Of a stretch of DNA of 64,000 bases, positions 21,359 through 59,460 are shown piece after piece. The notes beneath the pieces are model-generated. The model searched no databases. It was not told the DNA's origin and saw nothing but the letters and a program-made list of their open reading frames with translations. The stretch is from IMG/VR virus record IMGVR_UViG_3300042511_000879, positions 62,001 through 126,000 of that record; one strand, given 5' to 3'. The position numbers were made by a program, and so were the translations under genes. Position 1 is the first letter of the stretch; each line of letters begins with the position of its first letter.

Positions 21359-22651
21359 TTATATTGCTCTAGATTTAACGATTTCAACATCATTAAATTT
21401 AGCTAGTTTTTTATCGAATGAACCTTCTCTAAAGATTCCTCCATTCATTGTTCCTTTAAAGGTTCCTTTTCCATAAACATAACAATCATTTGCAGTGCAC
21501 GTACCATGTACATATGAACCATCTAATTTAGAACTATTAAGCTGTGTTGATTGGTAGAAATTACAATAATGAATATCAGAACCATTAACGTCGCATCCAT
21601 ACATATCACATTCAGTAAATTCTCCTCGTAAAAAACAACTTACAAACTCATATCCTCTAAGGTCAACACAATATTCTAGACGACCTCCATTAACTTGAAT
21701 TTTACCAGCATCGGTGTCATAATTAATATGTCCTTTGCTAAGGTCTCCATGTGTAAATAATTTCATAACTCTTTCTTTAACAGAAGGCCAGTATAGGTCA
21801 ACTACCTTAGGATCGTCATTCATGTCGACGGTGAACTTAACATTTTTCCAATTATCTTTAATTGTCTTCCAGTCCTTTCTAGCATCGATTATTCTTTGGT
21901 TATCTGCAACTATTTTTTTTAATTCAATTGCATTTAACTCTGTGAAGTCTGGGTTTTCGGTTGATTTCCATAATTGAAGTAAAAAACGGTCGACTAAATA
22001 AAGAATCGTAGTTGTTTTCTTTTCCCAGTCCTCTCCTCCAATATAACGAAATTCAAGATAATTTTTATGTCTTTTGTCAAAATTTATTCCGTAGTATTTT
22101 GTATCTGGGTAGATAAAATTCTGTTGATTGATATGCTTTCCATCAAAGAAGTATGTGTCCTCTTTTGGTAGGACAAATTTGATAGATTTTGCGTATGCTG
22201 AGTTTTCTCTTTTAGGAAAGAATTTGAATACTTGTTCTTCATTAAAATCCAAAATGAATTTAAGAACGTTCATTTTAGAGATACGATACTTGTTTTCAAT
22301 TTTTGATTTATCAAATGAAAGATTTAAGTGAATCGAAGACCTATCATTTGTATATCCATTCTCTTGAATCCATTGACAAACATTAATTATCATTAGACGA
22401 GCTGCAGTATATGGAAGGGCTCCAGTAACTAACTCAAGAAGTTTAGCTCCACCCGACATGTCAGGTTCTATTTTAAATTCATCGCGAGTTACTTCAAAAT
22501 CGCTATGTGCTTTATCCTCGACGTGAATCTTTTTGCCAAGCAGTTTTTCAAGTTTTTTTGCAGTATCTTCAGCACTAAAATTTGAGTAGAACTCAAACTC
22601 TACGCCTACTAGAGCATTTTGCAAAATTTTAGATTCATTTAGATTATTCAT
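21359..22651 (-). CDS. Putative amidoligase (COOH-NH2 ligase family) with C-terminal beta-helix-like repeats
   Basis: GVEFEF, IEPDMS...LELVTG, SIHLNLSF, KYYGINF and LEFRYIGG motifs; C-terminal pentapeptide-like Cys/Gly/Asp repeats. Confidence 0.75.
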   Translation of the reverse strand: MNNLNESKILQNALVGVEFEFYSNFSAEDTAKKLEKLLGKKIHVEDKAHSDFEVTRDEFKIEPDMSGGAKLLELVTGALPYTAARLMIINVCQWIQENGYTNDRSSIHLNLSFDKSKIENKYRISKMNVLKFILDFNEEQVFKFFPKRENSAYAKSIKFVLPKEDTYFFDGKHINQQNFIYPDTKYYGINFDKRHKNYLEFRYIGGEDWEKKTTTILYLVDRFLLQLWKSTENPDFTELNAIELKKIVADNQRIIDARKDWKTIKDNWKNVKFTVDMNDDPKVVDLYWPSVKERVMKLFTHGDLSKGHINYDTDAGKIQVNGGRLEYCVDLRGYEFVSCFLRGEFTECDMYGCDVNGSDIHYCNFYQSTQLNSSKLDGSYVHGTCTANDCYVYGKGTFKGTMNGGIFREGSFDKKLAKFNDVEIVKSRAI

Positions 22652-22703: not shown

Positions 22704-23492
22704 CTATACCATAGAATCTCTTTTCGCTATAAGTTTTTGAAGTGATTTGTTAACACTTACTAACCATGTTTGTATTGAAGTAACATTAATTCGTTTCCAA
22801 CTATCGATTTGAGCTTGGATGCTTCTTTCTTGTTCTTGATAGTAGTATGCTTCGTCATTATTATAATTTTTAGCAGCATCTCTCTTTACAATTTCTTTCC
22901 AAGTCGGCCATACATAATCACTTTTTGCCTTAATCTCATCATCTGTTAATTTAGAGTTAACTTCAAGTTTTTCTTGTTCTGTTTTAATACGTTGCTTGTA
23001 ACTATTTATTTCTTTATTAATTTGTTCAAGCTTAGACATTTTCTTAATTTTGTCTGCATATTCTTTAGCAATTTCGGTAGCTCCAGTTTTTGGAATGCTG
23101 GTCTTAACAATATATCTATAGTGAAGTCTCTGAATGTTATGTCCTCCTGCATAAATCGCTTCAGTTTGGAAACTATAAGTGTTTTCTCCTCTTTGGATTT
23201 GAGCATCAATTTGAATATTTCCTTTAACGCTCTTACGCACGTTCATTGATAATAGTGAATCGGTTGGTAAGGTATACATTTCAATAGATTTAACCATATC
23301 GTATGTTAAATTGATTCTAGCATACTCTCTGTCGTATTTAGTGAACTCCTGTTTAAAGGTCTCAACAAACCATTTTTCTGTTGCAGCTAGCATTTCAACA
23401 ATTGTAGGTTCTAACGAATCTAAAATAACATTAACAATATTATCTTGATTTGACTCATTTAAGAATTGTCCGTATGTTTTAAATTTGTTCAT
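22704..23492 (-). CDS. Hypothetical protein with capsid-targeting-like leader
   Basis: N-terminus MNKFKTYGQFLNE|S resembles the T4 CTS MKTYQEFIAE. Confidence 0.6.
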   Translation of the reverse strand: MNKFKTYGQFLNESNQDNIVNVILDSLEPTIVEMLAATEKWFVETFKQEFTKYDREYARINLTYDMVKSIEMYTLPTDSLLSMNVRKSVKGNIQIDAQIQRGENTYSFQTEAIYAGGHNIQRLHYRYIVKTSIPKTGATEIAKEYADKIKKMSKLEQINKEINSYKQRIKTEQEKLEVNSKLTDDEIKAKSDYVWPTWKEIVKRDAAKNYNNDEAYYYQEQERSIQAQIDSWKRINVTSIQTWLVSVNKSLQKLIAKRDSMV

Positions 23493-23517
23493 GTTTTATA
23501 TATCTGTTTTAATTATA

Positions 23518-23590
23518 ATGTAAATATAAACAAAAAAACCCAGATCCGAAAATCTGGGTTGTTAATTTTATGTTAAAGTTATTAACAATT
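23518..23590 (-). promoter_or_regulatory. Class-1 promoter with embedded terminator hairpin (copy A)
   Basis: Minus strand TTTC(23551-23548)-N19-TATATTTA(23528-23521). TTTC lies in the loop of the AACCCAGAT/ATCTGGGTT hairpin (23537-23560), which is followed by a T run. Upstream TTGTTAATAAC/TTAACA boxes. Confidence 0.75.
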
Positions 23591-24803
23591 ATAGTTTCAA
23601 GAAAACCTTTCTAGTAGCTACGTCCATTCTTGTTATTTGAACGGTAATATTATCGTTCTTTGTAAGTGAATCAACCTTAACATTATCAGGAAGTTCGGAT
23701 ACGTGAAGTAATCCAACAATTCCATCTCCAACATCTACGAACACTCCATAATCTTTAACAGATTTTATTGTCCCTTTAACTTCAACTGGAAAACTTTTAT
23801 ACTTAGTAGCAACATCAGTCCATGGGTCAACAATTTCAACATGCTCTAATTGAGTCAACGTTATTTTATCGTTATTGATTATCTCTTTAATCTTAAATTC
23901 AATAACATCGCCTGGATTAATTTCTCTAGCCTTATGTTTTCTTGCCATTTCTGTGTTTAAATCATTTGCATGAATCATTCCAGTTAAACAATTATCAAAT
24001 TCAACAAATACTCCGTATTTTGTAGAACCTGTTACGTTACCTTCTTTGGTTTCTCCAGGGGTATTTCTAAGGTCTTCAATAGCATTTGGAATAAGCGCTT
24101 GAAGATATTTTCTATGGGATACTATTACTGTTCCTTTTTCCGGAGAGAAACTCATCGGTACTACGTACATTTGTGTGTTAATTACAGAACCAAAGTCTGC
24201 AAGTTTATTAATACCAGCTAGGGATCCTGGCATAAAGCAATCAACTCCTTGAACATTAACAAAGTAACCTCCACCTGGAATCATACTTGTTACAGTTCCC
24301 ATATATGCAGTATTTCCAGTTTCAGCAGATGCTAAAATTTCTCTTAATGTAGCAGCTTTGATACCAGCTTCAACAGAACCTAATACAAATCCTCTAGTAC
24401 TTTTACTTTTTTCTGCTGTAATTTCAACAGATATTTCAGTTCCAGGAATTAATTTTGCTCTTGAGATTGTAGATTCTTTTGACAATTGAACATACACCAT
24501 TTCACGATATCCAATATCGATAGATGCCCATTCCATGTCTACTGCATAAACTTTACCAGTATGCGTTTCTCCAGCATGTATTACATGTGTTTGATTATTT
24601 TCACTCCAGTGACTTTCCATTAAATTAAGAAGTTCTTGAGCATATGGTTCTCTAGAATAAACCTTAACACCATCTGGCGCTTTTACATGCTGGTTTATTT
24701 TTCTAAGAGTAGATGGGCAATCTGCAGAATATGCTTCCCAATCGAAGTTAGAGATATCGTTTGATAAATTCTCTGTTTGTTTAGTTAAAACGTCTTGTGA
24801 CAT
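23589..24803 (-). CDS. rpsA: Phage-encoded ribosomal protein bS1 homolog (four S1 domains)
   Basis: Bacteroidota-like N-terminal FDWEAY; S1 repeats YMGTVTSMIPGGGYFVNV, EGNVTGSTKYGVFVEF and KGTIKSVKDYGVFVDVGDGIVGLLHVSEL. Confidence 0.9.
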   Translation of the reverse strand: MSQDVLTKQTENLSNDISNFDWEAYSADCPSTLRKINQHVKAPDGVKVYSREPYAQELLNLMESHWSENNQTHVIHAGETHTGKVYAVDMEWASIDIGYREMVYVQLSKESTISRAKLIPGTEISVEITAEKSKSTRGFVLGSVEAGIKAATLREILASAETGNTAYMGTVTSMIPGGGYFVNVQGVDCFMPGSLAGINKLADFGSVINTQMYVVPMSFSPEKGTVIVSHRKYLQALIPNAIEDLRNTPGETKEGNVTGSTKYGVFVEFDNCLTGMIHANDLNTEMARKHKAREINPGDVIEFKIKEIINNDKITLTQLEHVEIVDPWTDVATKYKSFPVEVKGTIKSVKDYGVFVDVGDGIVGLLHVSELPDNVKVDSLTKNDNITVQITRMDVATRKVFLKL

Positions 24804-24846
24804 TGTTTTTATTTTTAAAAGGTTAATAAATTATATATTTGTTTTT

Positions 24847-44722: not shown

Positions 44723-44941
44723 TTAAAGATGTGTAGTGTCAACGTGGTCATGTGACTGTCGAAGTATCATATATCGATCATATGATATACTCATTTCGAT
44801 CCATCCTCCAGTAATAGATTTGGGTACTTCGTGATGGTCAATTATATAGTTTGGTGGGGTAGTAACTCTTTCTAATAAAAAGTCCATCATCAAATCTGAT
44901 TCTCTATTATGAACCCATATTTTTACAAATGTATTATTCAT
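44723..44941 (-). CDS. Hypothetical protein
   Basis: ORF track; overlaps the glycosyltransferase stop. Confidence 0.55.
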   Translation of the reverse strand: MNNTFVKIWVHNRESDLMMDFLLERVTTPPNYIIDHHEVPKSITGGWIEMSISYDRYMILRQSHDHVDTTHL

Positions 44942-46784
44942 GTTCGTTATATATTATATTTGCCGCCATCTCTTCTTGATTAAATCTTGACACTGTATTT
45001 AACGGTGCACCTGGATTTTCGTCATACGCCCAATCTTTTAATCCTAACTCTTCAAACCTGTTTTTGATTTGCTCGTTATAATAATAACCTATTGTACGTA
45101 CTCGTCTTTGAATATCTGCTCTTGATAGATTATGAGTATTCTGTCCATTTGCATTATTATATAAGAATTGAATATACCCTAATTTTGGTATTTTGCAAGT
45201 TATTGCTTTTAAGAAAGTTCTTACAACCAACTCATAATCATCGGCTATTACAAGACTTCTATTATGTCCTCCTATTTCAAAATAAGTAGATCGTCTCCAT
45301 GCTCTTACGTGATTTGGTACACCAACTATATGTCTAATTGTTTTAGGATTAATATTCTGTTGATTAGAAACATTTAGTGTCTTTCCAGCATACTCTTCTT
45401 TTCTATATGATCCGTATCCAAGCGCAAATCCTTCGCTATATGTTAAAGAATTCCAGTTTTCATCAACTTCAACAGTGTCATTAAAAAAGAATCCGGCTTC
45501 TGGATGTTTTTTAGCTGCTTTATAAAGGTCTTCAGTACACCATGGAACTAATAAATCGTCATGGTCTAATTCAGCTAAAATAAAACCTTTAGCCATTGAG
45601 CAACATCTCCATTTAACCTCACCAATATTTCCACCGCTTTTTTCTCTAAAATCATAAAGGCGTACTCTTGGGTCTTTTGCTGCAATAGATTCTGCTATTT
45701 TTAATGTTTTACCACCATCAGTAGAGTCATTTACTAGTACCCATTCCCAATTGTTGTATGTTTGGTCTAGCAGCGATTGATATGTATTAAATAGTTTTTC
45801 ACCAGTATTATATATTGGGGTAAAATATGATATCATTGAACTATCTTCTAATCCATCTGGGTTCAACAGACTTTCCATTAAACACTGATACGCGATTTGT
45901 CCAGCATCTCTAGTGGAAACTTCTTTGTCAAGATTTAACCATTTTCGTCTAAATTGAAGTGGCATGCTTGCCATTTCTGGAAAGTTTTCCCAAGATTCTC
46001 CTCTAGTTATAATAACGTCTGGTTTAAATGAGGCTAGGGATATTGTGATGTCTTTGTCATTTTTTAAATACTTAATCTCCAAACTATCATCTTCATAGTC
46101 AAGTATTTTAAGTGATTTTAATTCAGGCTCATCATGCCCAATATACAATACTTTAGGAACTTTTGCAGTTGATTTTTTCTGTAAGTAATTGTAGTGTGAT
46201 AGTACTCTTCCCGTAAATGTAAACCATTCAGGATGTTCGGCATGAACGGAACTTATAAAGATTCCATCAGCTTGATAATCAGGCAAATATGAATATTCAT
46301 ATTCATTATAAACATCAATACTAACAATATATTGAGCTAAATCAACTCCCTGCACTTTCATAAATTTAGGATATGCTTTTCTATATGTTAAGTTTGTAAA
46401 ATCTCTTCCGGCAACATGTTGTGAAACTACATGGATTTTTTTGTCTGGATTCTTTAAAGAAGATTGCAAAACATATTCATAGAAACCTTCATGCATGATA
46501 TTATCATCATCTAAAAAATAAACCCAACCATCTGATAATTTTGAAATTATGGCAGAACATTGAGGATATAACATTCCTATAGCATCTCCTTTTTCAAAAT
46601 GGTATGTTGTTAGATCGTCTTTTAAATCACATAGTAATTCTGCATCAATATCTTTAAGATTTGTAGTGTCAAATACTATGTGCCAATTTATTTCGCATCC
46701 ATTTGGTATATTGTTAAAGACAGATTCTTTAACAGTCTTTAAATTCTGTAGGCGCGTTGCTCGAGTTATTATACTAATTTTCAT
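44934..46784 (-). CDS. Tandem GT-A (GT2-like) glycosyltransferase, two catalytic domains
   Basis: Domain 1: ISIITRATR...WVYFLDDDN. Domain 2: ISYFTPIYN...WEWVLVNDSTDG...AELDHDD...ADDYEL. Confidence 0.88.
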   Translation of the reverse strand: MKISIITRATRLQNLKTVKESVFNNIPNGCEINWHIVFDTTNLKDIDAELLCDLKDDLTTYHFEKGDAIGMLYPQCSAIISKLSDGWVYFLDDDNIMHEGFYEYVLQSSLKNPDKKIHVVSQHVAGRDFTNLTYRKAYPKFMKVQGVDLAQYIVSIDVYNEYEYSYLPDYQADGIFISSVHAEHPEWFTFTGRVLSHYNYLQKKSTAKVPKVLYIGHDEPELKSLKILDYEDDSLEIKYLKNDKDITISLASFKPDVIITRGESWENFPEMASMPLQFRRKWLNLDKEVSTRDAGQIAYQCLMESLLNPDGLEDSSMISYFTPIYNTGEKLFNTYQSLLDQTYNNWEWVLVNDSTDGGKTLKIAESIAAKDPRVRLYDFREKSGGNIGEVKWRCCSMAKGFILAELDHDDLLVPWCTEDLYKAAKKHPEAGFFFNDTVEVDENWNSLTYSEGFALGYGSYRKEEYAGKTLNVSNQQNINPKTIRHIVGVPNHVRAWRRSTYFEIGGHNRSLVIADDYELVVRTFLKAITCKIPKLGYIQFLYNNANGQNTHNLSRADIQRRVRTIGYYYNEQIKNRFEELGLKDWAYDENPGAPLNTVSRFNQEEMAANIIYNEHE

Positions 46785-49956: not shown

Positions 49957-50880
49957 TTATATTACGTCAAAAAAGAACATGTGAAAGAATCTTGCGTTCT
50001 CAATAGCATCGCCAAAATATTTACTTGGCGCATGAATTTGTTTAGAATCGAATAGAACTAAACGGTTGTATACATTACCAACCTCATCGATTTTATCAAA
50101 ATTAGTTGAATCATAAAAATTTGCTTGAGCATTCTTGCCTTTAAATGTATCTTCAAACACAGAATAGTCTTCAAAATTATCAAATCTTTTTTTACCAGTA
50201 TTTTTACCAGAATAGAAAGATGTACCTGTTTCGAATGGAGCATCTTTAGTTAAGAATACCATTCCTGCATACATCTGACTGTCAACATGAAATACGGGTA
50301 GATCGCTTGCTACACAATATTGGAATACTCCATTTGCATAACTTTCATAATTCCAGTTTATAATTTCGCGGCCAATTATCTTTTCTAATTTCTCTTTAGT
50401 GCCATCTAGAATAAACCTAGTTTGACTTCTTTTACCTTTGTGATAATCAGAGGGGTTGTATTCTAGATTATTCATTGCAAAATCTCTAATAAAGTCAGGA
50501 TCTGCATAAAAATTATCAACTACAATTAGACTTTTATTTTCATTATAGAATCCAGAATAATAAGCAATAAAATTATCAATGCTTCCTGGATTATAAATAA
50601 GTTCTCCAAATTTAACTTGAATCTTTGCGCCTTTAGAGATATTAAAAACTAATCCAACACTATCATCTTCTAAAGGATAATATTTAGAAACATCTGGACG
50701 ACTAATAACTGTTAATGGTATTTCAATATCATCGACTATCAATGAACTAACTGGTTTAAAGGAATCACCGTCTTTTACTAGAATCCAACCAGTTGCATTA
50801 TAGTTATTATCGGATACTTTGGTAATTGAATCAAAAAACCAAAAAACGTTTGGATCTTTTGTAAAAGTGTTATAAATCAT
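49957..50880 (-). CDS. 2OG-Fe(II) oxygenase-like protein with an extra N-terminal beta domain
   Basis: LIVVDNFYADPD start of the catalytic domain, HVD...H (QIHAP)...R iron/2OG motif, NRLVLFDS. Confidence 0.75.
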   Translation of the reverse strand: MIYNTFTKDPNVFWFFDSITKVSDNNYNATGWILVKDGDSFKPVSSLIVDDIEIPLTVISRPDVSKYYPLEDDSVGLVFNISKGAKIQVKFGELIYNPGSIDNFIAYYSGFYNENKSLIVVDNFYADPDFIRDFAMNNLEYNPSDYHKGKRSQTRFILDGTKEKLEKIIGREIINWNYESYANGVFQYCVASDLPVFHVDSQMYAGMVFLTKDAPFETGTSFYSGKNTGKKRFDNFEDYSVFEDTFKGKNAQANFYDSTNFDKIDEVGNVYNRLVLFDSKQIHAPSKYFGDAIENARFFHMFFFDVI

Positions 50881-50906: not shown

Positions 50907-52880
50907 TTATTTAAAAGAAAGTTTCTCATCTCCTTTTTTATATGAAATCGTGTACGTTTTATTTCCTTTAACAATTTCTTTAGCTAAAATACCATCTGCT
51001 AATAAGTCTTCAACATACGTTTGAATTGCTCTTTTAAGAGGTCTAGCTCCATATTGAGCATCATACCCACGTTCTGCTAAAAATACTATCGCCGTTTTTG
51101 CAACTTTAATAATATATTCTTGTTCAACCATTCTTTCAATTACTTTTTGAATTTCGATTTCTGCAATTTTAGCAACATCTTCTTGTTTTAATCCATCAAA
51201 CAATACTATTTCATCCAATCTATTTAAGAATTCCGGAGCAAATTTGTTTTTAAGCTCTTTTCTGATAACAGTTTCCATTTCCATTTTGTGGGTGGCCGTA
51301 GAACTTGAACTTGAGAATCCGATTCCAGCCCCAAATTCTGCAACTCTTTTTGCTCCAACATTACTTGTCATAATAATGATAGTATTCGTAAAGTCAATAG
51401 TTCTACCAAGAGTATCTGTTAAACGACCCTCATCTAAAACCTGTAACAAGATATTGAAAATATCTGGGTGGGCCTTTTCAACTTCATCAAATAATACTAC
51501 TGAATATGGTTTACGTCGGACTTGTTCTGTTAACTGTCCACCATCCTCATGTCCTTCATATCCCGGAGGAGAACCAATAAGTCTACTTACGTTAAACTTT
51601 TCTTGGTATTCTGACATGTCGATTCTGATTAAAGAATCCTCGCTTCCGAAATAATATTCAGAAAGGGCTTTAACAGTTTCAGTTTTACCAACTCCAGTAG
51701 GTCCAATAAACATAAATGAACCGATAGGTTTTTTAGATGAACTTACTCCAGTTCGGCTTCTTTTAATAACTCTACATAGACCTTCAACCGCAGTATCTTG
51801 CCCGATAATCATCGCTTTTAATTCATTTTCCATATCAATAACAATTCTGCTCTCGTCATCGGTCATTCTTGTTACCGGAATTCCAGTAGATTCAGAAATT
51901 ACTTCAGCAATATCTTCATAAGTTACTGCCTTCTTATTTAGTCTAAGCGTCTCCTCCCATTCTTTGGTTCTTTTTGTTATCTCTTCTCGCTTACTAATTT
52001 CAAGGTCTCTTAAATTTCCGGCTTTTTCATAATTAGTAGCATCTGCTGCTTTTAACTTTGCGGCTTTTAATTTATCAGCTTCAATTTCAAGTTCTTTAAT
52101 AATTTCTGGAATTTTTACCTCTTTTAAATGTACTTTTGCTCCAGCCTCGTCCATAACATCAATTGCTTTGTCCGGTAATTCTCTTTGAGTAATATATCGG
52201 TCAGATAATACTACACAGGCTTTAATAGCGTCAGGAGTATATGATACTGAATGGAAGTCTTCGTAATTTGGTTTAATTCTGTCTAGAATTTCGATTGCAT
52301 CTTCAAGGGATGGTGGGTCTATAAAGATTTCTTGGAATCTTCTGGTAAGAGCTCCATCGGTTTCAATATTTTCACGATACTCATCGATTGTCGTAGCACC
52401 AATACATTGTACTTGTCCTCTTGCCAATGCCGGTTTTAAGATATTACTAGCATCTAATGAACCACTTACACCACCAGCGCCTACAATTGTGTGAATCTCA
52501 TCAATAAAGACAATAACATCTGGGTTCTCTTTAAGTTCATCAACAATGTTTTTCATTCGTTCCTCAAATTCTCCACGGTATTTTGTACCTGCAACTACGT
52601 TTGCAATATTAAGAGCAATTATACGTTTATTAAGAAGAGTCATTGCAACTTTCTTTTCAACAATACGTTGCGCAATTGCTTCAACTAGTGCAGTTTTACC
52701 AACCCCAGGATCCCCTAAAATAATTGGATTGTTTTTCTTTCTACGAGAAAGGATTTGACATATTCTATGGACCTCTTTTTCTCTTCCGATGATAGGGTCA
52801 AGTTTCCCATCTGCCGCTAGTTTAGTTAAGTCCTCTCCGAATTGGTCAATGAATGGAGTATTTGTTTTCTTACTGGTCAT
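50907..52880 (-). CDS. clpC: ClpC-type Hsp100 ATPase lacking the Clp N-terminal repeat domain
   Basis: Two AAA+ modules (GDPGVGKT and GPTGVGKT), UVR middle domain (NYEKAGNLRD), IGF loop (GAGIGFS); sequence begins directly at the D1 pre-helix. Confidence 0.92.
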   Translation of the reverse strand: MTSKKTNTPFIDQFGEDLTKLAADGKLDPIIGREKEVHRICQILSRRKKNNPIILGDPGVGKTALVEAIAQRIVEKKVAMTLLNKRIIALNIANVVAGTKYRGEFEERMKNIVDELKENPDVIVFIDEIHTIVGAGGVSGSLDASNILKPALARGQVQCIGATTIDEYRENIETDGALTRRFQEIFIDPPSLEDAIEILDRIKPNYEDFHSVSYTPDAIKACVVLSDRYITQRELPDKAIDVMDEAGAKVHLKEVKIPEIIKELEIEADKLKAAKLKAADATNYEKAGNLRDLEISKREEITKRTKEWEETLRLNKKAVTYEDIAEVISESTGIPVTRMTDDESRIVIDMENELKAMIIGQDTAVEGLCRVIKRSRTGVSSSKKPIGSFMFIGPTGVGKTETVKALSEYYFGSEDSLIRIDMSEYQEKFNVSRLIGSPPGYEGHEDGGQLTEQVRRKPYSVVLFDEVEKAHPDIFNILLQVLDEGRLTDTLGRTIDFTNTIIIMTSNVGAKRVAEFGAGIGFSSSSSTATHKMEMETVIRKELKNKFAPEFLNRLDEIVLFDGLKQEDVAKIAEIEIQKVIERMVEQEYIIKVAKTAIVFLAERGYDAQYGARPLKRAIQTYVEDLLADGILAKEIVKGNKTYTISYKKGDEKLSFK

Positions 52881-56496: not shown

Positions 56497-57633
56497 ATGG
56501 CAATTGCAACTCTTTCTAACACCTTAATTGAACAACGTAAAGTAGCTACATTGGAGGCTCAAAACCTTCGTAAAGTAGTACCATTCCGCGATATCAATTT
56601 AATAGATGGTGAATCTATCGAATATAATGGTCAAAAAATTAACCTTACACCTACTGCATTCAAAAATCTTTTAGGTCTATTAGGTATGAGTAACCAATTT
56701 GCTCAGAAATTCGAATCTCTCTTTACTAAAGAGGCTAAATCTCAGTTTATCAACACTATGAAAAATGCAATGGCATCTAATAGTGGTAAACTTTCTGAAG
56801 TAACCCTTGTACTTAACCCTATTAGTAAATCGGTAGTGGCTATCACCAAGAAAGATCAATTTGGTATATCTAACCAACAATTCATGGGAGTTGCTGAGAA
56901 TATCATAGATAACCACGGTATGAACGTAACAAACTGGTCAGTAGACCCAGGAACTGGTATTGTAACTATTAATGCATTTAATCCTAAAGCGAATTTCGCA
57001 GTTCAAGGTTTATCTGATGAGGTATTTACTGGAGGTGTTACTTTCAAAAATTCACCTAAAGATGGTTTCCAAGTTCTTCCTTATGTTAATCGTCAGTTTT
57101 GTACTAATGGTTTAACTACTGCGTTTGCTGAGGAGTCTTATACTCTTCAATCTTTGGACCAAGGTTCTATGGAAAAGTTCTTTGAAAATATGAACGAATT
57201 ACGTAAGAATAACTTTGCTCCTACTGGTTTTGCTGACCGTGTAAGAATGGCTCATAACACTCCTGCTTCCCTAAGCGAATTACAGTTTGCACATAACCTT
57301 ATTGAACCATATGCTGGAGAACGTTCTAACACTTGGATTCCTTATGCTGAAAACATGAATGCATTCTATAATGCTGGTTTTGATAACATATCTGGTCAAC
57401 AGATGAAACATGCTAAATCAAATACTTCTGTATGGGATGTTATCAATGGTGTTACTCACTTTGCAACCCATGGTGCTGGTATTATCGATACAGACATGCA
57501 AGACTATAATGCATCTGAATTAATGGTAAAATCTGGTAACCTATTCGGTAAAAAAGCTTTTGACCACGAAAATACTATGCCAGACCTTTTTAGAGGTAGA
57601 GACTTAGTACGTAGTGGTTCATTATTAAACTAA
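56497..57633 (+). CDS. DUF932-like phage/plasmid protein
   Basis: FKNSPKDG...RQFCTNGL and TSVWDVINGVTHFATH match the DUF932 NSxDG...RxxCxNG and WxxxNxxT motifs. Confidence 0.65.
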   Translation: MAIATLSNTLIEQRKVATLEAQNLRKVVPFRDINLIDGESIEYNGQKINLTPTAFKNLLGLLGMSNQFAQKFESLFTKEAKSQFINTMKNAMASNSGKLSEVTLVLNPISKSVVAITKKDQFGISNQQFMGVAENIIDNHGMNVTNWSVDPGTGIVTINAFNPKANFAVQGLSDEVFTGGVTFKNSPKDGFQVLPYVNRQFCTNGLTTAFAEESYTLQSLDQGSMEKFFENMNELRKNNFAPTGFADRVRMAHNTPASLSELQFAHNLIEPYAGERSNTWIPYAENMNAFYNAGFDNISGQQMKHAKSNTSVWDVINGVTHFATHGAGIIDTDMQDYNASELMVKSGNLFGKKAFDHENTMPDLFRGRDLVRSGSLLN

Positions 57634-57660
57634 TATTTGGTAGTCTGCATATCGGAATTA

Positions 57661-57691
57661 AAGGGACCATTCTCACATAGGTCCCTTTTTT
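57661..57691 (+). terminator. Intrinsic terminator
   Basis: AAGGGACC...GGTCCCTT stem followed by a T run, after the DUF932-like gene. Confidence 0.8.
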
Positions 57692-57699
57692 ATGTGAAA

Positions 57700-57780
57700 T
57701 TGTTAATAACTTTTTGAAAATAATTTGAAAAACTGTTTCCAGTGTCGTGGATATTGATTATATTTACATATCTAATTTTA
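57700..57780 (+). promoter_or_regulatory. Class-1 promoter
   Basis: AATTGTTAATAAC box, TTTC(57736-57739)-N19-TATATTTA(57759-57766). Confidence 0.85.
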
Positions 57781-57793
57781 ACAAAGAAACACC

Positions 57794-58267
57794 ATGATGA
57801 CTCAAGCACAAATCACCGAACAAAACGAAATCGAATCTAAATTGGCTCATAACTACGAGTTGACTCACAGAGAGAATATGATTTTACTATATTCTGATTT
57901 TCATAAGGATGCCTACGGTTTCCGTCCTCGTACTATTAATGTATATGCCTTAACCACTGAGGAACTGGAGGCTGATTTTGACCGTTTCGAAGCGACATGT
58001 AAGATTAATAGACACGAAGAGGAAATGGCCGAAATGGAGGCTGATATCGCGTTCCGTGCCCTTATAACTAATACAATCGCTATAGGTGCAAACGATGAGG
58101 TTACTGCATTACGTTGGATCGCTGAAGGTGCTGTAGAAGATTATGGTTATGACTATGAGCATTTCCTTTGGAACCAAGGTATAGCATACTCTGCCTACGG
58201 TAAGGAGTTGGCTAAGAGATTTGCTCCTATCTGGGGTAAAGCTCTTCAAACCCAGAAAGTTGCATAA
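57794..58267 (+). CDS. Hypothetical phage protein
   Basis: YSDFHKDAYGFRPR motif; has its own class-1 promoter. Confidence 0.7.
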   Translation: MMTQAQITEQNEIESKLAHNYELTHRENMILLYSDFHKDAYGFRPRTINVYALTTEELEADFDRFEATCKINRHEEEMAEMEADIAFRALITNTIAIGANDEVTALRWIAEGAVEDYGYDYEHFLWNQGIAYSAYGKELAKRFAPIWGKALQTQKVA

Positions 58268-58269
58268 AC

Positions 58270-58340
58270 TTTAACAAACTTTTAACATTTAAAAGTTTCC
58301 GGTTTCCACAATATTGATTATATTTACATATCTAATTAAA
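58270..58340 (+). promoter_or_regulatory. Class-1 promoter
   Basis: TTAACA repeats, TTTC(58296-58299)-N19-TATATTTA(58319-58326). Confidence 0.85.
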
Positions 58341-58350
58341 ACACCACATT

Positions 58351-59460
58351 ATGAACAGACAATCTTACTTAATCCGCACACAACCTAACGAATTCATCGT
58401 TTTAGTAAACACGAAAAACCCAATTGACACCCTCTTAATCGAGCCTGGTCATTCAAAATATACTTGGGTCCAAAACCAAGACGCTAACCGTATTATCAAC
58501 ATCACCGAAACTGGTAGATGGACAAGTAATAAGGACTATAATAACGATTACGGAACCTCAACATCTAAACAACCTCAATCGGTTAACCCTTGTGCCCCTG
58601 TTGAGGTTACACTTACCAAATTAGACGACTTAAATATCGATGATTCCCTATTTACCAGCCTTCCAACTGGAACTATCTTTGACCAGTTTTGTTCAACTGA
58701 AGGTGGATTCTTACCTGGAACTAATATAATGGCTGCTGGAGCTCCTGGTGTCGGTAAAACAACAGTGCTATTAGAACTTCTATCTAAGCTATCTGCTCAA
58801 GGTAAACGGGTCTTATTTATATCTGCCGAAATGAACCAGATAGATATGGCACGTTACCTTAAAAGATTCCCACACTGGGGACAATTACCTATCCTTTTCC
58901 TATCTGACTACACTGAGTCTTGTCCAAAAGGAGTAATTGAAGGTGTACTTAACCAAGGATGGGACGTTGTCTTAACCGATTCATATACCGAAGTTAACGA
59001 TACCATCAAGGAGGAATGTAACATGACCAGAGGTAAAACCGAAAAATGGTTCCTAGACCTAATGACTCAGCATAATAAAGGTGGTAACAAGACGAAAACA
59101 TATACAACCTTCGTAACTATCCTGCAATTATCTAAAGGTGGTAATTTCGTTGGTTCTAATAAACTGAAACACATGACAACTGCGATGATGATGTTGGACT
59201 GGGACGGAAACGAAAACTCAGGTAGAAGGTTCATGGAGTTCTCTAAAAACAGAACAGGTCAAGTCGGTAAAAAACTATATTTCGAATTATCAGATGGTGT
59301 TTCCTTCGACGAAGGCCGATATACAAGAGACCTATTTAACGACGAGGTCCTAGCTGAGGAAAGAAAAGCCCTAACAGGAGAAAGTAATGCCTTCGACAAA
59401 CTATTCGGTTTCGACAAGGATGCCGTACCTGAGGAATTAAAAACCCTGGTAGAACTATAA
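58351..59460 (+). CDS. RadA/Sms-like RecA-fold ATPase without Zn finger or Lon-like domain
   Basis: GGFLPG...GAPGVGKTT, VLFISAEM, LTDS, GSNKLKHMTTAMM and KNRTG (compare RadA KNRFG). Confidence 0.75.
   Translation: MNRQSYLIRTQPNEFIVLVNTKNPIDTLLIEPGHSKYTWVQNQDANRIINITETGRWTSNKDYNNDYGTSTSKQPQSVNPCAPVEVTLTKLDDLNIDDSLFTSLPTGTIFDQFCSTEGGFLPGTNIMAAGAPGVGKTTVLLELLSKLSAQGKRVLFISAEMNQIDMARYLKRFPHWGQLPILFLSDYTESCPKGVIEGVLNQGWDVVLTDSYTEVNDTIKEECNMTRGKTEKWFLDLMTQHNKGGNKTKTYTTFVTILQLSKGGNFVGSNKLKHMTTAMMMLDWDGNENSGRRFMEFSKNRTGQVGKKLYFELSDGVSFDEGRYTRDLFNDEVLAEERKALTGESNAFDKLFGFDKDAVPEELKTLVEL

What the first reader, a model, noticed from the sequence alone, without database searches (positions are those of the whole stretch)
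23589..24803. Phage-encoded, four-domain ribosomal protein bS1
Seen: four S1 repeats and a Bacteroidota-like FDWEAY N-terminus, placed in the structural region. Known: canonical bS1 has six domains, binds the 30S subunit through its N-terminal part and recruits A/U-rich leaders; S1 genes have been reported in some huge phages. Inference: a truncated bS1 that could replace host bS1 and bias translation toward the A-rich, SD-less phage late mRNAs.
Basis: partly seen in the sequence, partly recalled or inferred. Interest (0 to 1): 0.6.

Follow-up and report, generated by a model that had tools for sequence, protein, structure and literature searches.

The report
Phage-encoded four-domain ribosomal protein S1
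A freshwater jumbo phage that most likely infects Bacteroidia (Flavobacterium-type) bacteria carries a strongly conserved, shortened copy of ribosomal protein S1 that keeps the host-type anchor for docking on the small ribosomal subunit. Phage S1 genes were already known, but this one offers a concrete way to test whether they really sit on ribosomes.

Summary
Window 23589..24803 (-) encodes a 404-aa protein with four OB/S1 domains, collinear with D1-D4 of bacterial bS1 (E 3e-42 to E. coli bS1; hhalign 99.8% to Bacteroidia bS1). It lies in a conserved baseplate gene block of a ~233-236 kb freshwater phage with 29 tRNAs.

The FDWEAY segment aligns on the F(D/N)W helix of Bacteroidia bS1. In the 2026 F. 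johnsoniae 30S structure that helix anchors bS1 to uS8/uS2. The motif occurs in 115/118 family members and 22/26 Bacteroidia, but in 0/25 other Bacteroidota classes sampled.

A complex prediction with F. johnsoniae uS2 passed (ipSAE 0.72; best control 0.01). A like complex is solved, so this shows likeness only.

The phage genome is SD-less with A peaks at -3/-6/-11/-13, as in Bacteroidia. This weakens the "bias toward phage mRNAs" idea, because host mRNAs look the same.

The family is large (>1000 proteins, 505 IMG/VR contigs), always four-domain, and under strong purifying selection (dN/dS 0.05-0.09). It forms one viral clade with Lak megaphage S1.

Phage rpS1 was reported by Al-Shayeb 2020, so this is a new, well-characterised member of a known kind. 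Ribosome binding is likely; mRNA selectivity is unproven.

The parts
23589..24803 (-). CDS of the phage bS1-like protein (404 aa plus stop), protein P0001
   Evidence: ORF list and translation. bS1 matches. dN/dS 0.05-0.09 against close relatives.
24600..24755 (-). N-terminal ribosome-anchor module, residues 17-68. It consists of helix 22-27 (FDWEAY), a long loop with a phage-specific ~17-residue insertion (invariant C29, P30, N37; near-invariant G45, V48, S50, E52), and helix 55-68 that starts with invariant Y54-A55.
   Evidence: hhalign places FDW on the Bacteroidia F(D/N)W and shows the loop insertion. AF2 secondary structure. F. johnsoniae bS1 residues 4-40 form a helix-loop-helix bound to uS2/uS8 (PMC13000457). 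Predicted uS2 contacts at residues 34, 42, 45-50, 52, 54-55, 58-62 and 65. Conservation values.
24729..24746 (-). FDWEAY motif (residues 20-25). F20 and W22 are invariant in the family, and W22 is invariant also across the 16 Bacteroidia bS1 in alignment A3.
   Evidence: Motif counts: 115/118 family members, 22/26 Bacteroidia, 0/25 other Bacteroidota classes, 0/6 outgroups.
24360..24578 (-). Domain 1 (residues ~76-148), the D1-type OB fold (ribosome/uS2-binding type)
   Evidence: Domain HMM best-hits D1 of cellular bS1, though weakly. Predicted uS2 contacts at 86-104 and 132-139. Foldseek D1-D2 match to 9guq_B, TM 0.71.
24096..24320 (-). Domain 2 (residues ~162-236), the D2-type OB fold. It is the most conserved domain in the family (0.81) and has a CFMPGSLAG block that corresponds to AFLPGSQID of Bacteroidia D2.
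   Evidence: Domain HMM best-hits D2 in 53 of 56 cellular bS1. hhalign. Conservation.
23844..24062 (-). Domain 3 (residues ~248-320), a canonical RNA-binding S1 domain of the D3-D5 type
   Evidence: Pfam S1 stretch. Domain HMM scores against cellular bS1 rank D5 > D4 > D3.
23592..23798 (-). Domain 4 (residues ~336-404), a canonical RNA-binding S1 domain. The protein ends right after it (…TRKVFLKL) in all family members.
   Evidence: Pfam S1 best stretch 342-402. Domain HMM scores rank D4 > D5 > D3. Family alignment.
24831..24838 (-). ATATATAA element 28-35 nt upstream of the ATG, inside the 43-nt intergenic spacer. It is a variant of the GATATATA / TATATAAT words enriched upstream of genes in this phage, and is a candidate phage promoter element (inferred).
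   Evidence: k-mer enrichment in 109 upstream regions: GATATATA in 20 regions vs 1.7 expected, TATATAAT in 21 vs 2.1. No sigma-70-type promoter excess.
23530..23560 (-). Intrinsic-terminator-like hairpin (10-bp stem, 4-nt loop, then a T run) starting 29 nt after the S1 stop codon
   Evidence: Terminator scan: 6 sites found in this region vs 0.7 expected in shuffles. Sequence read.

Best explanation
The gene encodes a viral bS1: an N-terminal Bacteroidia-type anchor, the two ribosome-binding OB domains (D1, D2), and two canonical RNA-binding S1 domains.

Proposed mechanism:
1. The gene is transcribed with or next to the baseplate genes, probably late. This step is inferred.
2. The protein docks on host (Bacteroidia, probably Flavobacteriales) 30S subunits at the normal bS1 site. 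The YAQ helix, D1 and a phage-specific loop segment bind uS2, and the FDW helix binds uS8. Sequence homology shows the shared parts. The binding itself is predicted, not measured.
3. Its two RNA-binding domains capture the A-rich, SD-less leaders and feed them to the mRNA channel, as host bS1 does.
4. The net effect is to keep or raise the fraction of S1-replete ribosomes while large amounts of phage protein are made and host bS1 is limiting or no longer made.

Any preference for phage over host mRNAs, for example through the loss of D5, D6 and the conserved host C-terminal tail, is possible but unproven.
For: Homology and architecture:
- Collinear matches to bS1.
- d2 maps cleanly to D2 and d1 to D1.

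N-terminal anchor:
- The FDW motif is specific to class Bacteroidia and aligned in register.
- In F. johnsoniae 30S this helix (FLANFNWHNF, residues 11-20) contacts uS8, and residues 4-40 bind uS2/uS8 (PMC13000457).

Predicted binding:
- Complex with RS2_FLAJ1: ipSAE 0.72 vs best control 0.01. That mark was reached by 58 of 80 solved complexes and 2 of 110 mismatched pairs. The three runs agree in at least 82% of contacts, and partner pLDDT is at least 73.
- Predicted interface residues are more conserved than the rest of residues 17-150 (0.70 vs 0.59, permutation p = 0.009).

Functional plausibility:
- E. coli rpsA lacking D5-D6 is viable, and D1-D3 retain 30S binding, mRNA binding and melting (PMC3858243).
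- The phage genome is SD-less (12/247 starts with an SD core vs 28-36/247 in controls) with A peaks at -3, -6, -11 and -13.
- The phage carries 29 tRNAs, which shows investment in translation.

Conservation and expression:
- dN/dS is 0.05-0.09.
- More than 1000 homologues and 505 IMG/VR contigs share the same architecture and synteny.
- An RNA-library contig covers the whole gene of a ~91% identical relative.
Against: - There is no experimental ribosome association.
- The complex pass may reflect memory of solved E. coli S1-uS2 structures, and the F. johnsoniae uS2 used is only a proxy for the unknown host.
- The protein scores far below every curated bS1 equivalog cut-off (143 vs 524 bits; 116 vs 720 for the Bacteroidia model).
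- D1 is very divergent (about 7 bits to cellular D1).
- In the D1-D4 tree the phage proteins form a long-branched clade outside cellular bS1.
- The RNA-library contig could be DNA carry-over.
- Late timing is inferred only from gene position and a motif.
- Host and phage leaders share the same features, so a selective advantage for phage mRNAs is not evident.
Confidence: 0.6

Rival explanations
1. Off-ribosome RNA chaperone or mRNA-protection factor. The protein binds A/U-rich phage transcripts free in the cytoplasm. There it would shield them from host RNases, melt structure, or act as cofactor of a phage or host RNA enzyme, as host S1 does for T4 RegB or Qbeta replicase. It would not occupy the bS1 site.
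For: Domains 3 and 4 are canonical RNA-binding S1 domains. S1 has documented extraribosomal roles with phages (summarised in PMC13157829). Al-Shayeb 2020 explicitly leaves open a role 'on or off the ribosome'. D1 is highly divergent from cellular D1.
Against: This does not explain why the Bacteroidia-specific ribosome-anchor helix and the YAQ helix are invariant. It does not explain why d2, a ribosome-side domain, is the most conserved. It does not explain why the predicted uS2 interface is preferentially conserved and scores 0.72 vs 0.01 for the best control.
Confidence: 0.18
2. Competitive blocker. The protein binds the bS1 site more tightly than host bS1, helped by the phage-specific loop insertion. 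It acts mainly to shut off or re-programme host translation, producing phage-specialised ribosomes that discriminate between mRNAs.
For: The phage-specific, near-invariant insertion (G45-S50) makes the lowest-error predicted contacts with uS2 residues 32-36. The protein lacks D5, D6 and the conserved Bacteroidia C-terminal TLGD…L…LK motif. Al-Shayeb 2020 proposed competitive substitution for phage ribosomal proteins.
Against: No affinity data exist. No sequence feature that distinguishes phage from host leaders was found (host signals in PMC13000457). D1-D4 of E. coli S1 supports general translation (PMC3858243).
Confidence: 0.15
3. Virion-associated or assembly-associated protein. Its fixed position inside the baseplate gene block would reflect a structural or packaged (injected) role.
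For: The gene is invariably placed between the baseplate hub block and the amidoligase/adaptor/wedge block in 80 of 80 loci.
Against: There is no similarity to any structural protein and no PHROG match. Every part of the protein is accounted for by bS1 homology. Phage structural modules often harbour late-expressed accessory genes.
Confidence: 0.04
4. Cellular contamination or a decaying passenger gene with no function.
For: Some 'phage' rpsA records are indeed bacterial contamination. For example, Acinetobacter phage MD-2021a carries rpsA between cmk and himD.
Against: The gene sits mid-contig in a phage structural block with conserved synteny. It has an intact frame in all relatives and dN/dS of 0.05-0.09. 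It is present in about 19 independent lake or freshwater studies.
Confidence: 0.01

Closest known systems
Bacteroidia ribosomal protein bS1 (e.g. Flavobacterium johnsoniae bS1, 591 aa, PDB 9zcd; Arpin et al. 2026, PMC13000457)
   Same: Same N-terminal F(D/N)W aromatic helix, then a loop, a YS element and a second helix, followed by D1-D4 in the same order (hhalign 99.8%, E 8e-29). Both operate in an SD-less translation system with upstream adenines.
   Different: The phage protein has only four domains. D5, D6 and the conserved C-terminal tail are absent. It has a ~17-residue conserved insertion in the anchor loop. Identity is only 21-25%. It scores 116 bits against the Bacteroidia equivalog model, whose cut-off is 720. 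It lies outside the Bacteroidia clade in the D1-D4 tree.
Putative rpS1 of huge phages (Al-Shayeb et al. 2020, PMC7162821), including Lak megaphages of Prevotella
   Same: Encoded by phages over 200 kb whose genes lack Shine-Dalgarno sequences. The proposed role is in translation initiation. Lak S1 shares FDW plus the N·NIKT··KVYS·E·YAQ·LY module, and all form one starred clade.
   Different: That paper could not confirm 'true' rpS1. Here the ribosome-anchor homology and a uS2 complex prediction are added. Lak S1 is shorter (369 aa) and only 28-29% identical. This family is freshwater/marine and 394-442 aa long.
E. coli rpsA lacking domains 5-6 (Duval et al. 2013, PMC3858243)
   Same: D1-D4 architecture. 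The engineered form is viable and keeps 30S binding, mRNA docking and melting.
   Different: That is an engineered truncation of a gammaproteobacterial protein that works with SD-containing mRNAs. It gives slower growth and cold sensitivity. It has no Bacteroidia-type anchor.
bS1 of Microcystis jumbo phage PhiMa05 (PMC13157829)
   Same: A jumbo-phage-encoded bS1 homologue proposed to replace the host protein.
   Different: PhiMa05 bS1 groups with Vampirovibrio bS1 and is part of a six-ribosomal-protein set. It was not among the tblastn hits to the present protein. The present phage has bS1 alone, with no bS21 found.

Membership tests
Bacterial ribosomal protein bS1 (rpsA) | Tandem OB/S1 domains beginning with the divergent ribosome-binding D1 and D2, followed by canonical RNA-binding S1 domains, collinear with reference bS1 | tested here: met
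   phmmer to E. coli bS1: query 78-399 on chain 21-341, E 2.9e-42. hhalign to 23 Bacteroidia bS1: 99.8%. d2 maps to D2 in 53/56. Foldseek top hits are ribosome-bound bS1.
Bacterial ribosomal protein bS1 (rpsA) | Score above the curated NCBIfam equivalog cut-off | tested here: not met
   Best is NF004952 at 143.4 bits vs cut-off 524. TIGR00717 gives 131.6 vs 577. The Bacteroidia model NF004953 gives 115.9 vs 720. Genuine Bacteroidia bS1 score 788-958 bits.
Bacterial ribosomal protein bS1 (rpsA) | Six S1 domains (Bacteroidota/Pseudomonadota type) | tested here: not met
   Four domains, and the protein ends right after the fourth in all family members.
Bacterial ribosomal protein bS1 (rpsA) | N-terminal segment that binds uS2 (and uS8 in Bacteroidia) | tested here: met
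   At sequence level, FDW and the following helix align in register with Bacteroidia bS1. The predicted complex with RS2_FLAJ1 gives ipSAE 0.72 vs best control 0.01. This is prediction only; a like complex is solved, so it shows likeness.
Bacterial ribosomal protein bS1 (rpsA) | Physical presence on 30S subunits | not testable with these tools
   Needs biochemistry or cryo-EM.
Bacterial ribosomal protein bS1 (rpsA) | Phylogenetic placement among cellular bS1 (specifically Bacteroidia) | tested here: inconclusive
   The phage S1 form a separate starred clade on a stem of 2.1 changes per column, outside the cellular clade. The AU test does not reject phage+Bacteroidia as one group (p = 0.263).
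Phage-encoded rpS1-like proteins of huge phages (Al-Shayeb 2020) | Multi-S1-domain protein encoded within a bona fide phage genome over 200 kb | tested here: met
   236-kb virus record. Baseplate neighbours. Synteny in 80 viral loci.
Phage-encoded rpS1-like proteins of huge phages (Al-Shayeb 2020) | Phage genome lacking canonical Shine-Dalgarno sites | tested here: met
   12/247 starts have an SD core vs 28-36/247 in control windows. G is 5-10% at -20..-1.
Non-ribosomal single S1-domain proteins (CvfD/GSP13/Ygs, PNPase, RNase R, NusA, Tex) | One S1 domain alone or fused to a catalytic or other module | tested here: not met
   These models match only single domains, at 30-60 bits. No other module is present. 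The whole length is explained by bS1.

The most novel reading that the evidence does not exclude
The phage-specific, near-invariant insertion in the anchor loop (C29-P30…N37…G45-S50) is shared with Lak megaphage S1. It may give the viral protein a tighter or additional grip on uS2 or the platform. The protein would then displace host bS1 and create phage-specialised ribosomes in Bacteroidia, with altered mRNA choice because D5, D6 and the host C-terminal tail are missing. That would be a viral ribosome-remodelling strategy shared by huge phages of gut and aquatic Bacteroidota.
Probability: 0.18. Interest if true: 0.75.

Novelty: new member of a known kind. Interest (0 to 1): 0.45.

Why it matters
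Whether virus-encoded ribosomal proteins really join host ribosomes, and what they change there, is still largely untested for bS1. Al-Shayeb 2020 stated that 'true' rpS1 could not be confirmed.

This family is abundant, conserved and carries a recognisable Bacteroidia-specific anchor. The host counterpart of that anchor was resolved on the F. johnsoniae 30S subunit in 2026, and a purified F. johnsoniae initiation system exists.

The question can therefore be tested directly: binding, competition with host bS1, and the effect on SD-less initiation. The anchor motif is also a usable host-class marker (Bacteroidia) for uncultured huge phages.

Tried and rejected
- PHROGs gave no match for the protein.
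- The genome-contig scan returned only three loci, all apparently phage contigs binned into MAGs. It gave no cellular sister group. The 'Flavobacteriaceae' MAG label is only a weak host hint.
- The outgroup sample from the phylum of G002 was poor: 4 of 17 genomes had an S1.
- Rows left out of the tree:
  - L004, because my extraction of its ORF failed.
  - L006, L019, L022, L024, L025 and L034, because of a wrong ORF pick, a duplicate or an aberrant N-terminus.
  - L058, L060, L065, L067, L068, L074 and L075, because of very long tails, truncated starts or masked letters.
- The tree did not resolve a donor lineage.
- Assigning d3 and d4 to specific paralogues failed. d3 scores D5 > D4 > D3 and d4 scores D4 > D5 > D3, so 'D1-D4' is a collinear label only.
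- No bS21 was found in the genome.
- The sigma-70 promoter scan found fewer sites than shuffles (4 vs 8.1), so no host-type promoter is claimed.
- The metatranscriptome evidence is contigs only and cannot give strand, ends or level.
- The costly representative-protein search was not used, because the word search and family scans settled the identity.
The uS8 contact of the FDW helix was not tested.
Full report
**1. The observation**

Window 23589..24803 on the minus strand is an intact ATG-initiated ORF of 404 codons.
- Pfam finds S1 domains (93.9 bits, E 7.6e-27).
- Eleven NCBIfam bS1 equivalog models match collinearly over residues ~17/54-402. All are far below their cut-offs: the best is 143 bits against a cut-off of 524.
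- phmmer against PDB sequences aligns residues 78-399 with residues 21-341 of E. coli bS1, which is domains D1-D4 (E 2.9e-42).
- An AlphaFold2 model built on a 76-row alignment has mean pLDDT 77.9 and pTM 0.52. It shows four beta-barrel domains preceded by a short helix (22-27), a long loop and a second helix (55-68).
- Foldseek's best PDB matches are ribosome-bound bS1 chains: 9gut_B at E 2e-25, and the D1-D2 pair of 9guq_B at TM 0.71.

So the four repeats, the FDWEAY N-terminus (residues 20-25) and the coordinates are all correct.

**2. It is phage DNA, in a structural module**

The window is bases 62001-126000 of a 236,071-bp IMG/VR virus record.
- The record has 34% GC, and almost all genes are on one strand.
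- It carries 29 tRNA genes.
- Head and tail of the record are diverged copies (92-95% identity over ~2 kb). This suggests a wrap-around assembly of a ~233-kb circularly permuted genome.

The neighbours of the S1 gene are a baseplate wedge subunit, a head-tail adaptor-like protein, a Phage_base_V baseplate hub and a putative amidoligase.

A scan of IMG/VR found 505 contigs that encode relatives. In all 80 loci fetched (53-100% S1 identity) the gene lies on the same strand, between the hub block and the amidoligase/adaptor/wedge block.

The stretch occurs in lake-water or freshwater metagenomes from about 19 studies.

**3. A large, uniform viral family under selection**

The word-index search gave 1010 proteins at E <= 1e-5.
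- The best 120 share 52-94% identity. All but five short, partly covering entries (301-383 aa) are 393-442 aa long, and they lie on contigs up to 223 kb.
- All 12 aligned representatives end immediately after the fourth domain (…TRKVFLKL). The four-domain form is therefore native, not a truncation artefact.
- Against eight close relatives dN/dS is 0.05-0.09.
- Domain 2 is the most conserved part.

**4. Domain identities**

I built HMMs of each phage domain and searched them against 56 cellular Bacteroidota bS1.
- d1 maps to D1, but weakly (~7 bits).
- d2 maps to D2 cleanly (53 of 56, ~24 bits).
- d3 and d4 are canonical RNA-binding domains. They score about equally with D3, D4 and D5: for d3 the order is D5 > D4 > D3, and for d4 it is D4 > D5 > D3.

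The protein is thus the ribosome-binding half of bS1 plus two RNA-binding domains. 'D1-D4' is only a collinear label.

**5. The N-terminal anchor**

Sampling 30 genomes of the class of a Flavobacteriaceae MAG showed that NF004953 is the Bacteroidia bS1 model: 30 of 31 genomes passed its cut-off.

The Bacteroidia bS1 proteins carry F(D/N)W about 40 residues before D1. Motif counts are as follows:

| Group | With motif |
|---|---|
| Phage family | 115 of 118 |
| Bacteroidia | 22 of 26 (some of the rest have I/V-D-W) |
| Other Bacteroidota classes sampled | 0 of 25 |
| Outgroups | 0 of 6 |
| Lak-B2, Lak-C1 and one MAG-binned phage contig | present |

Profile-profile alignment of the phage family with 23 Bacteroidia bS1 gives 99.8% probability and E 8.4e-29. 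It is collinear from residue 12 to 402. It puts FDW on F(D/N)W and the following YS element on YS, with a ~17-residue phage-specific insertion between them.

The function of this segment in the host protein is now known. In the F. johnsoniae 30S cryo-EM structure, bS1 residues 4-40 form a helix-loop-helix stably associated with uS2 and uS8. The aromatic helix FLANFNWHNF (residues 11-20) contacts uS8 (PMC13000457; PDB 9zcd is that protein).

The phage family's invariant F20, W22, Y54 and A55, and the near-invariant loop residues, therefore sit in the ribosome-docking element.

**6. Predicted binding to uS2**

- The score was 0.72 (ipSAE, median of three runs), and the best of three controls was 0.01.
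- That mark was reached by 58 of 80 solved complexes and 2 of 110 mismatched pairs.
- The runs agree in at least 82% of contacts, and partner pLDDT is at least 73.
- The counts hold only roughly because my own alignment was used.
- E. coli S1-uS2 complexes are solved, so the pass shows likeness, not proof that this copy binds.

The confident interface uses helix 54-65, D1 residues 86-104 and 132-139, and the segment G45-S50 of the phage-specific insertion. Within the family these residues are more conserved than the rest of residues 17-150 (0.70 vs 0.59, permutation p = 0.009). The FDW helix is not in the uS2 interface, consistent with a uS8 contact that I could not test.

**7. Translation signals of the phage**

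For 247 ORFs, positions -20 to -1 contain 5-10% G and 50-65% A. There are A peaks at -3 (0.62), -6 (0.57), -11 (0.65) and -13 (0.64).

An SD core occurs upstream of 12 of 247 genes, against 28 and 36 of 247 in control windows.

This is the Bacteroidia pattern, with adenines at -3, -6, -12 and -13 (PMC13000457). It supports a Bacteroidia host together with three other observations:
- the anchor motif;
- the clade shared with Prevotella Lak phages;
- a 51%-identical homologue on a contig binned with a Flavobacteriaceae MAG.

It also means that phage and host mRNAs look alike to bS1.

**8. Phylogeny**

I built a careful IQ-TREE tree of the D1-D4 columns (72 rows, 325 columns).
- Bacteroidia bS1 come out as one group (100/100).
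- All phage S1 form one starred clade on a stem of 2.1 changes per column. This clade includes the present family, Lak-B2/C1, LR756500, LR756501 and a MAG-binned contig. It lies outside the cellular six-domain clade.
- Long branches are involved.
- Forcing phage plus Bacteroidia together costs 9.0 log-likelihood units and is not rejected (AU p = 0.263).

The tree therefore neither shows nor excludes a Bacteroidia donor. The N-terminal motif, which was not in the tree columns, is the stronger signal. It could reflect descent or adaptation to Bacteroidia ribosomes.

The Lak proteins share not only FDW but also the phage-specific insertion module. The viral form is therefore old or has moved among phages of Bacteroidota.

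**9. Expression signals**

The 43-nt spacer upstream of the gene holds an ATATATAA element at -35 to -28. Related words are strongly enriched upstream of this phage's genes: GATATATA in 20 regions vs 1.7 expected, and TATATAAT in 21 vs 2.1.

A 10-bp hairpin with a T run follows the stop codon by 29 nt.

A 2,056-nt contig from a metatranscriptomic library, about 91% identical, spans the whole gene and the end of the upstream gene. Neighbouring structural genes are also represented. This is compatible with transcription alongside the structural block. However, contigs cannot show strand or level, and DNA carry-over is possible.

**10. Mechanism and rivals**

The best-supported reading (confidence about 0.6) is a ribosome-bound viral bS1 that sustains or boosts initiation on SD-less, A-rich leaders. 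It is made plausible by three published results:
- E. coli S1 without D5-D6 is viable, and D1-D3 carry 30S binding, mRNA docking and melting (PMC3858243).
- F. johnsoniae bS1 is substoichiometric on purified ribosomes (PMC7797042).
- F. johnsoniae bS1 stimulates SD-less initiation (PMC13000457).

The rivals are:

| Rival | Confidence | Main objection |
|---|---|---|
| Off-ribosome RNA chaperone or protector | ~0.18 | Does not explain the conserved anchor |
| Competitive blocker or specialiser of ribosomes | ~0.15 | A variant of the main model; needs affinity and selectivity data |
| Virion-associated role suggested by the fixed baseplate position | ~0.04 | No structural similarity; whole length is bS1 homology |
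| Contamination or decay | ~0.01 | Refuted by synteny and selection |

**11. Comparison with what is known, and novelty**

Phage rpS1 and its association with SD-less huge-phage genomes were reported by Al-Shayeb et al. 2020. They noted that true rpS1 could not be confirmed. Earlier viromes had hinted at bS1 (PMC6375957), and PhiMa05 carries a different bS1.

A 2025 paper on freshwater 'moraphages' predicts Flavobacteriia hosts, reports kinship to Lak phages and lists ClpA as a core gene. It does not mention ribosomal proteins. The present window does encode a ClpA/B-like ATPase, but I could not test membership of that lineage.

The finding is therefore a new, well-defined member of a known kind. 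What is added here:
- the link to the structurally defined Bacteroidia anchor;
- the phage-specific insertion shared with Lak;
- the size, uniformity and synteny of the family;
- the point that host and phage leaders are alike.

The protein fails two formal bS1 membership criteria (equivalog cut-offs and six domains). I file it as a bS1-derived viral protein that most likely works like bS1, not as an equivalog.

Noticed in passing
window 21359..22651 (-): The 430-aa protein next to the S1 gene matches Amidoligase_2 (PF12224, E 2.8e-7) and has a Cys/Gly-rich repetitive C-terminus. It is conserved (69-100% identity) beside S1 in all 80 related loci. That is an unusual enzyme to find inside a baseplate gene block.
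   Followed up: partly
window 22704..23492 (-): This 262-aa protein has no family match and is present in only 36 of 80 related loci. It marks a variable slot just downstream of the S1 terminator. Its upstream region carries both enriched motifs (TTATATTTACAT and GATATATA).
   Followed up: partly
G000 C1:164460-203571 (outside the window): There are 29 tRNA genes, most in one cluster at 199-204 kb. ARAGORN calls one with a four-base anticodon (ttga) at 201806-201895.
   Followed up: no
G000 C1:1-2097 and 233191-236071: Head and tail of the virus record match at 92-95% identity with an ~800-bp difference. This suggests a strain-variant wrap-around of a circularly permuted ~233-kb genome. The record is probably nearer complete than CheckV's 77%. 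Two records with identical S1 are 234,066 and 234,467 bp long.
   Followed up: partly
window 50907..52880 (-): A ClpA/ClpB-like double AAA+ ATPase (AAA_2 at E 5.6e-72, plus ClpB_D2-small). ClpA is listed as a core gene of the freshwater 'moraphage' lineage (PMC12619734), so this phage may belong to or be near that lineage.
   Followed up: no
window ~56500..59460 (+): A small island of plus-strand genes with higher GC (0.40-0.42) in an otherwise minus-strand genome. It includes a KaiC/DnaB-like P-loop ATPase at 58351..59460.
   Followed up: no
whole G000, upstream regions; e.g. window 23493..23588 and 24804..24846: Two words are 8-9-fold enriched in non-coding upstream regions: GATATATA (20 regions vs 1.7 expected) and TTATATTTACAT-type words (24-25 vs 2.4). 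They are candidate phage promoter classes. Sigma-70-type sites are not enriched.
   Followed up: partly
alignment A2 (Bacteroidia bS1, loci L046-L073): Bacteroidia bS1 proteins share a conserved C-terminal peptide (T·LGD···L··LK··M) after D6. I am aware of no assigned function for it. The phage S1 lacks it.
   Followed up: no
L160 (CAKLQH020000011.1, 'Acinetobacter phage MD-2021a'): The annotated rpsA of this 'phage' record lies between cmk and himD, the bacterial chromosomal arrangement. This phage-database S1 is almost certainly bacterial contamination.
   Followed up: partly
window 44934..46784 (-) and 49957..50880 (-): A 616-aa protein with a family-2 glycosyltransferase domain and a DUF6445 protein lie among the late genes. 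They may be involved in virion or host-surface modification.
   Followed up: no
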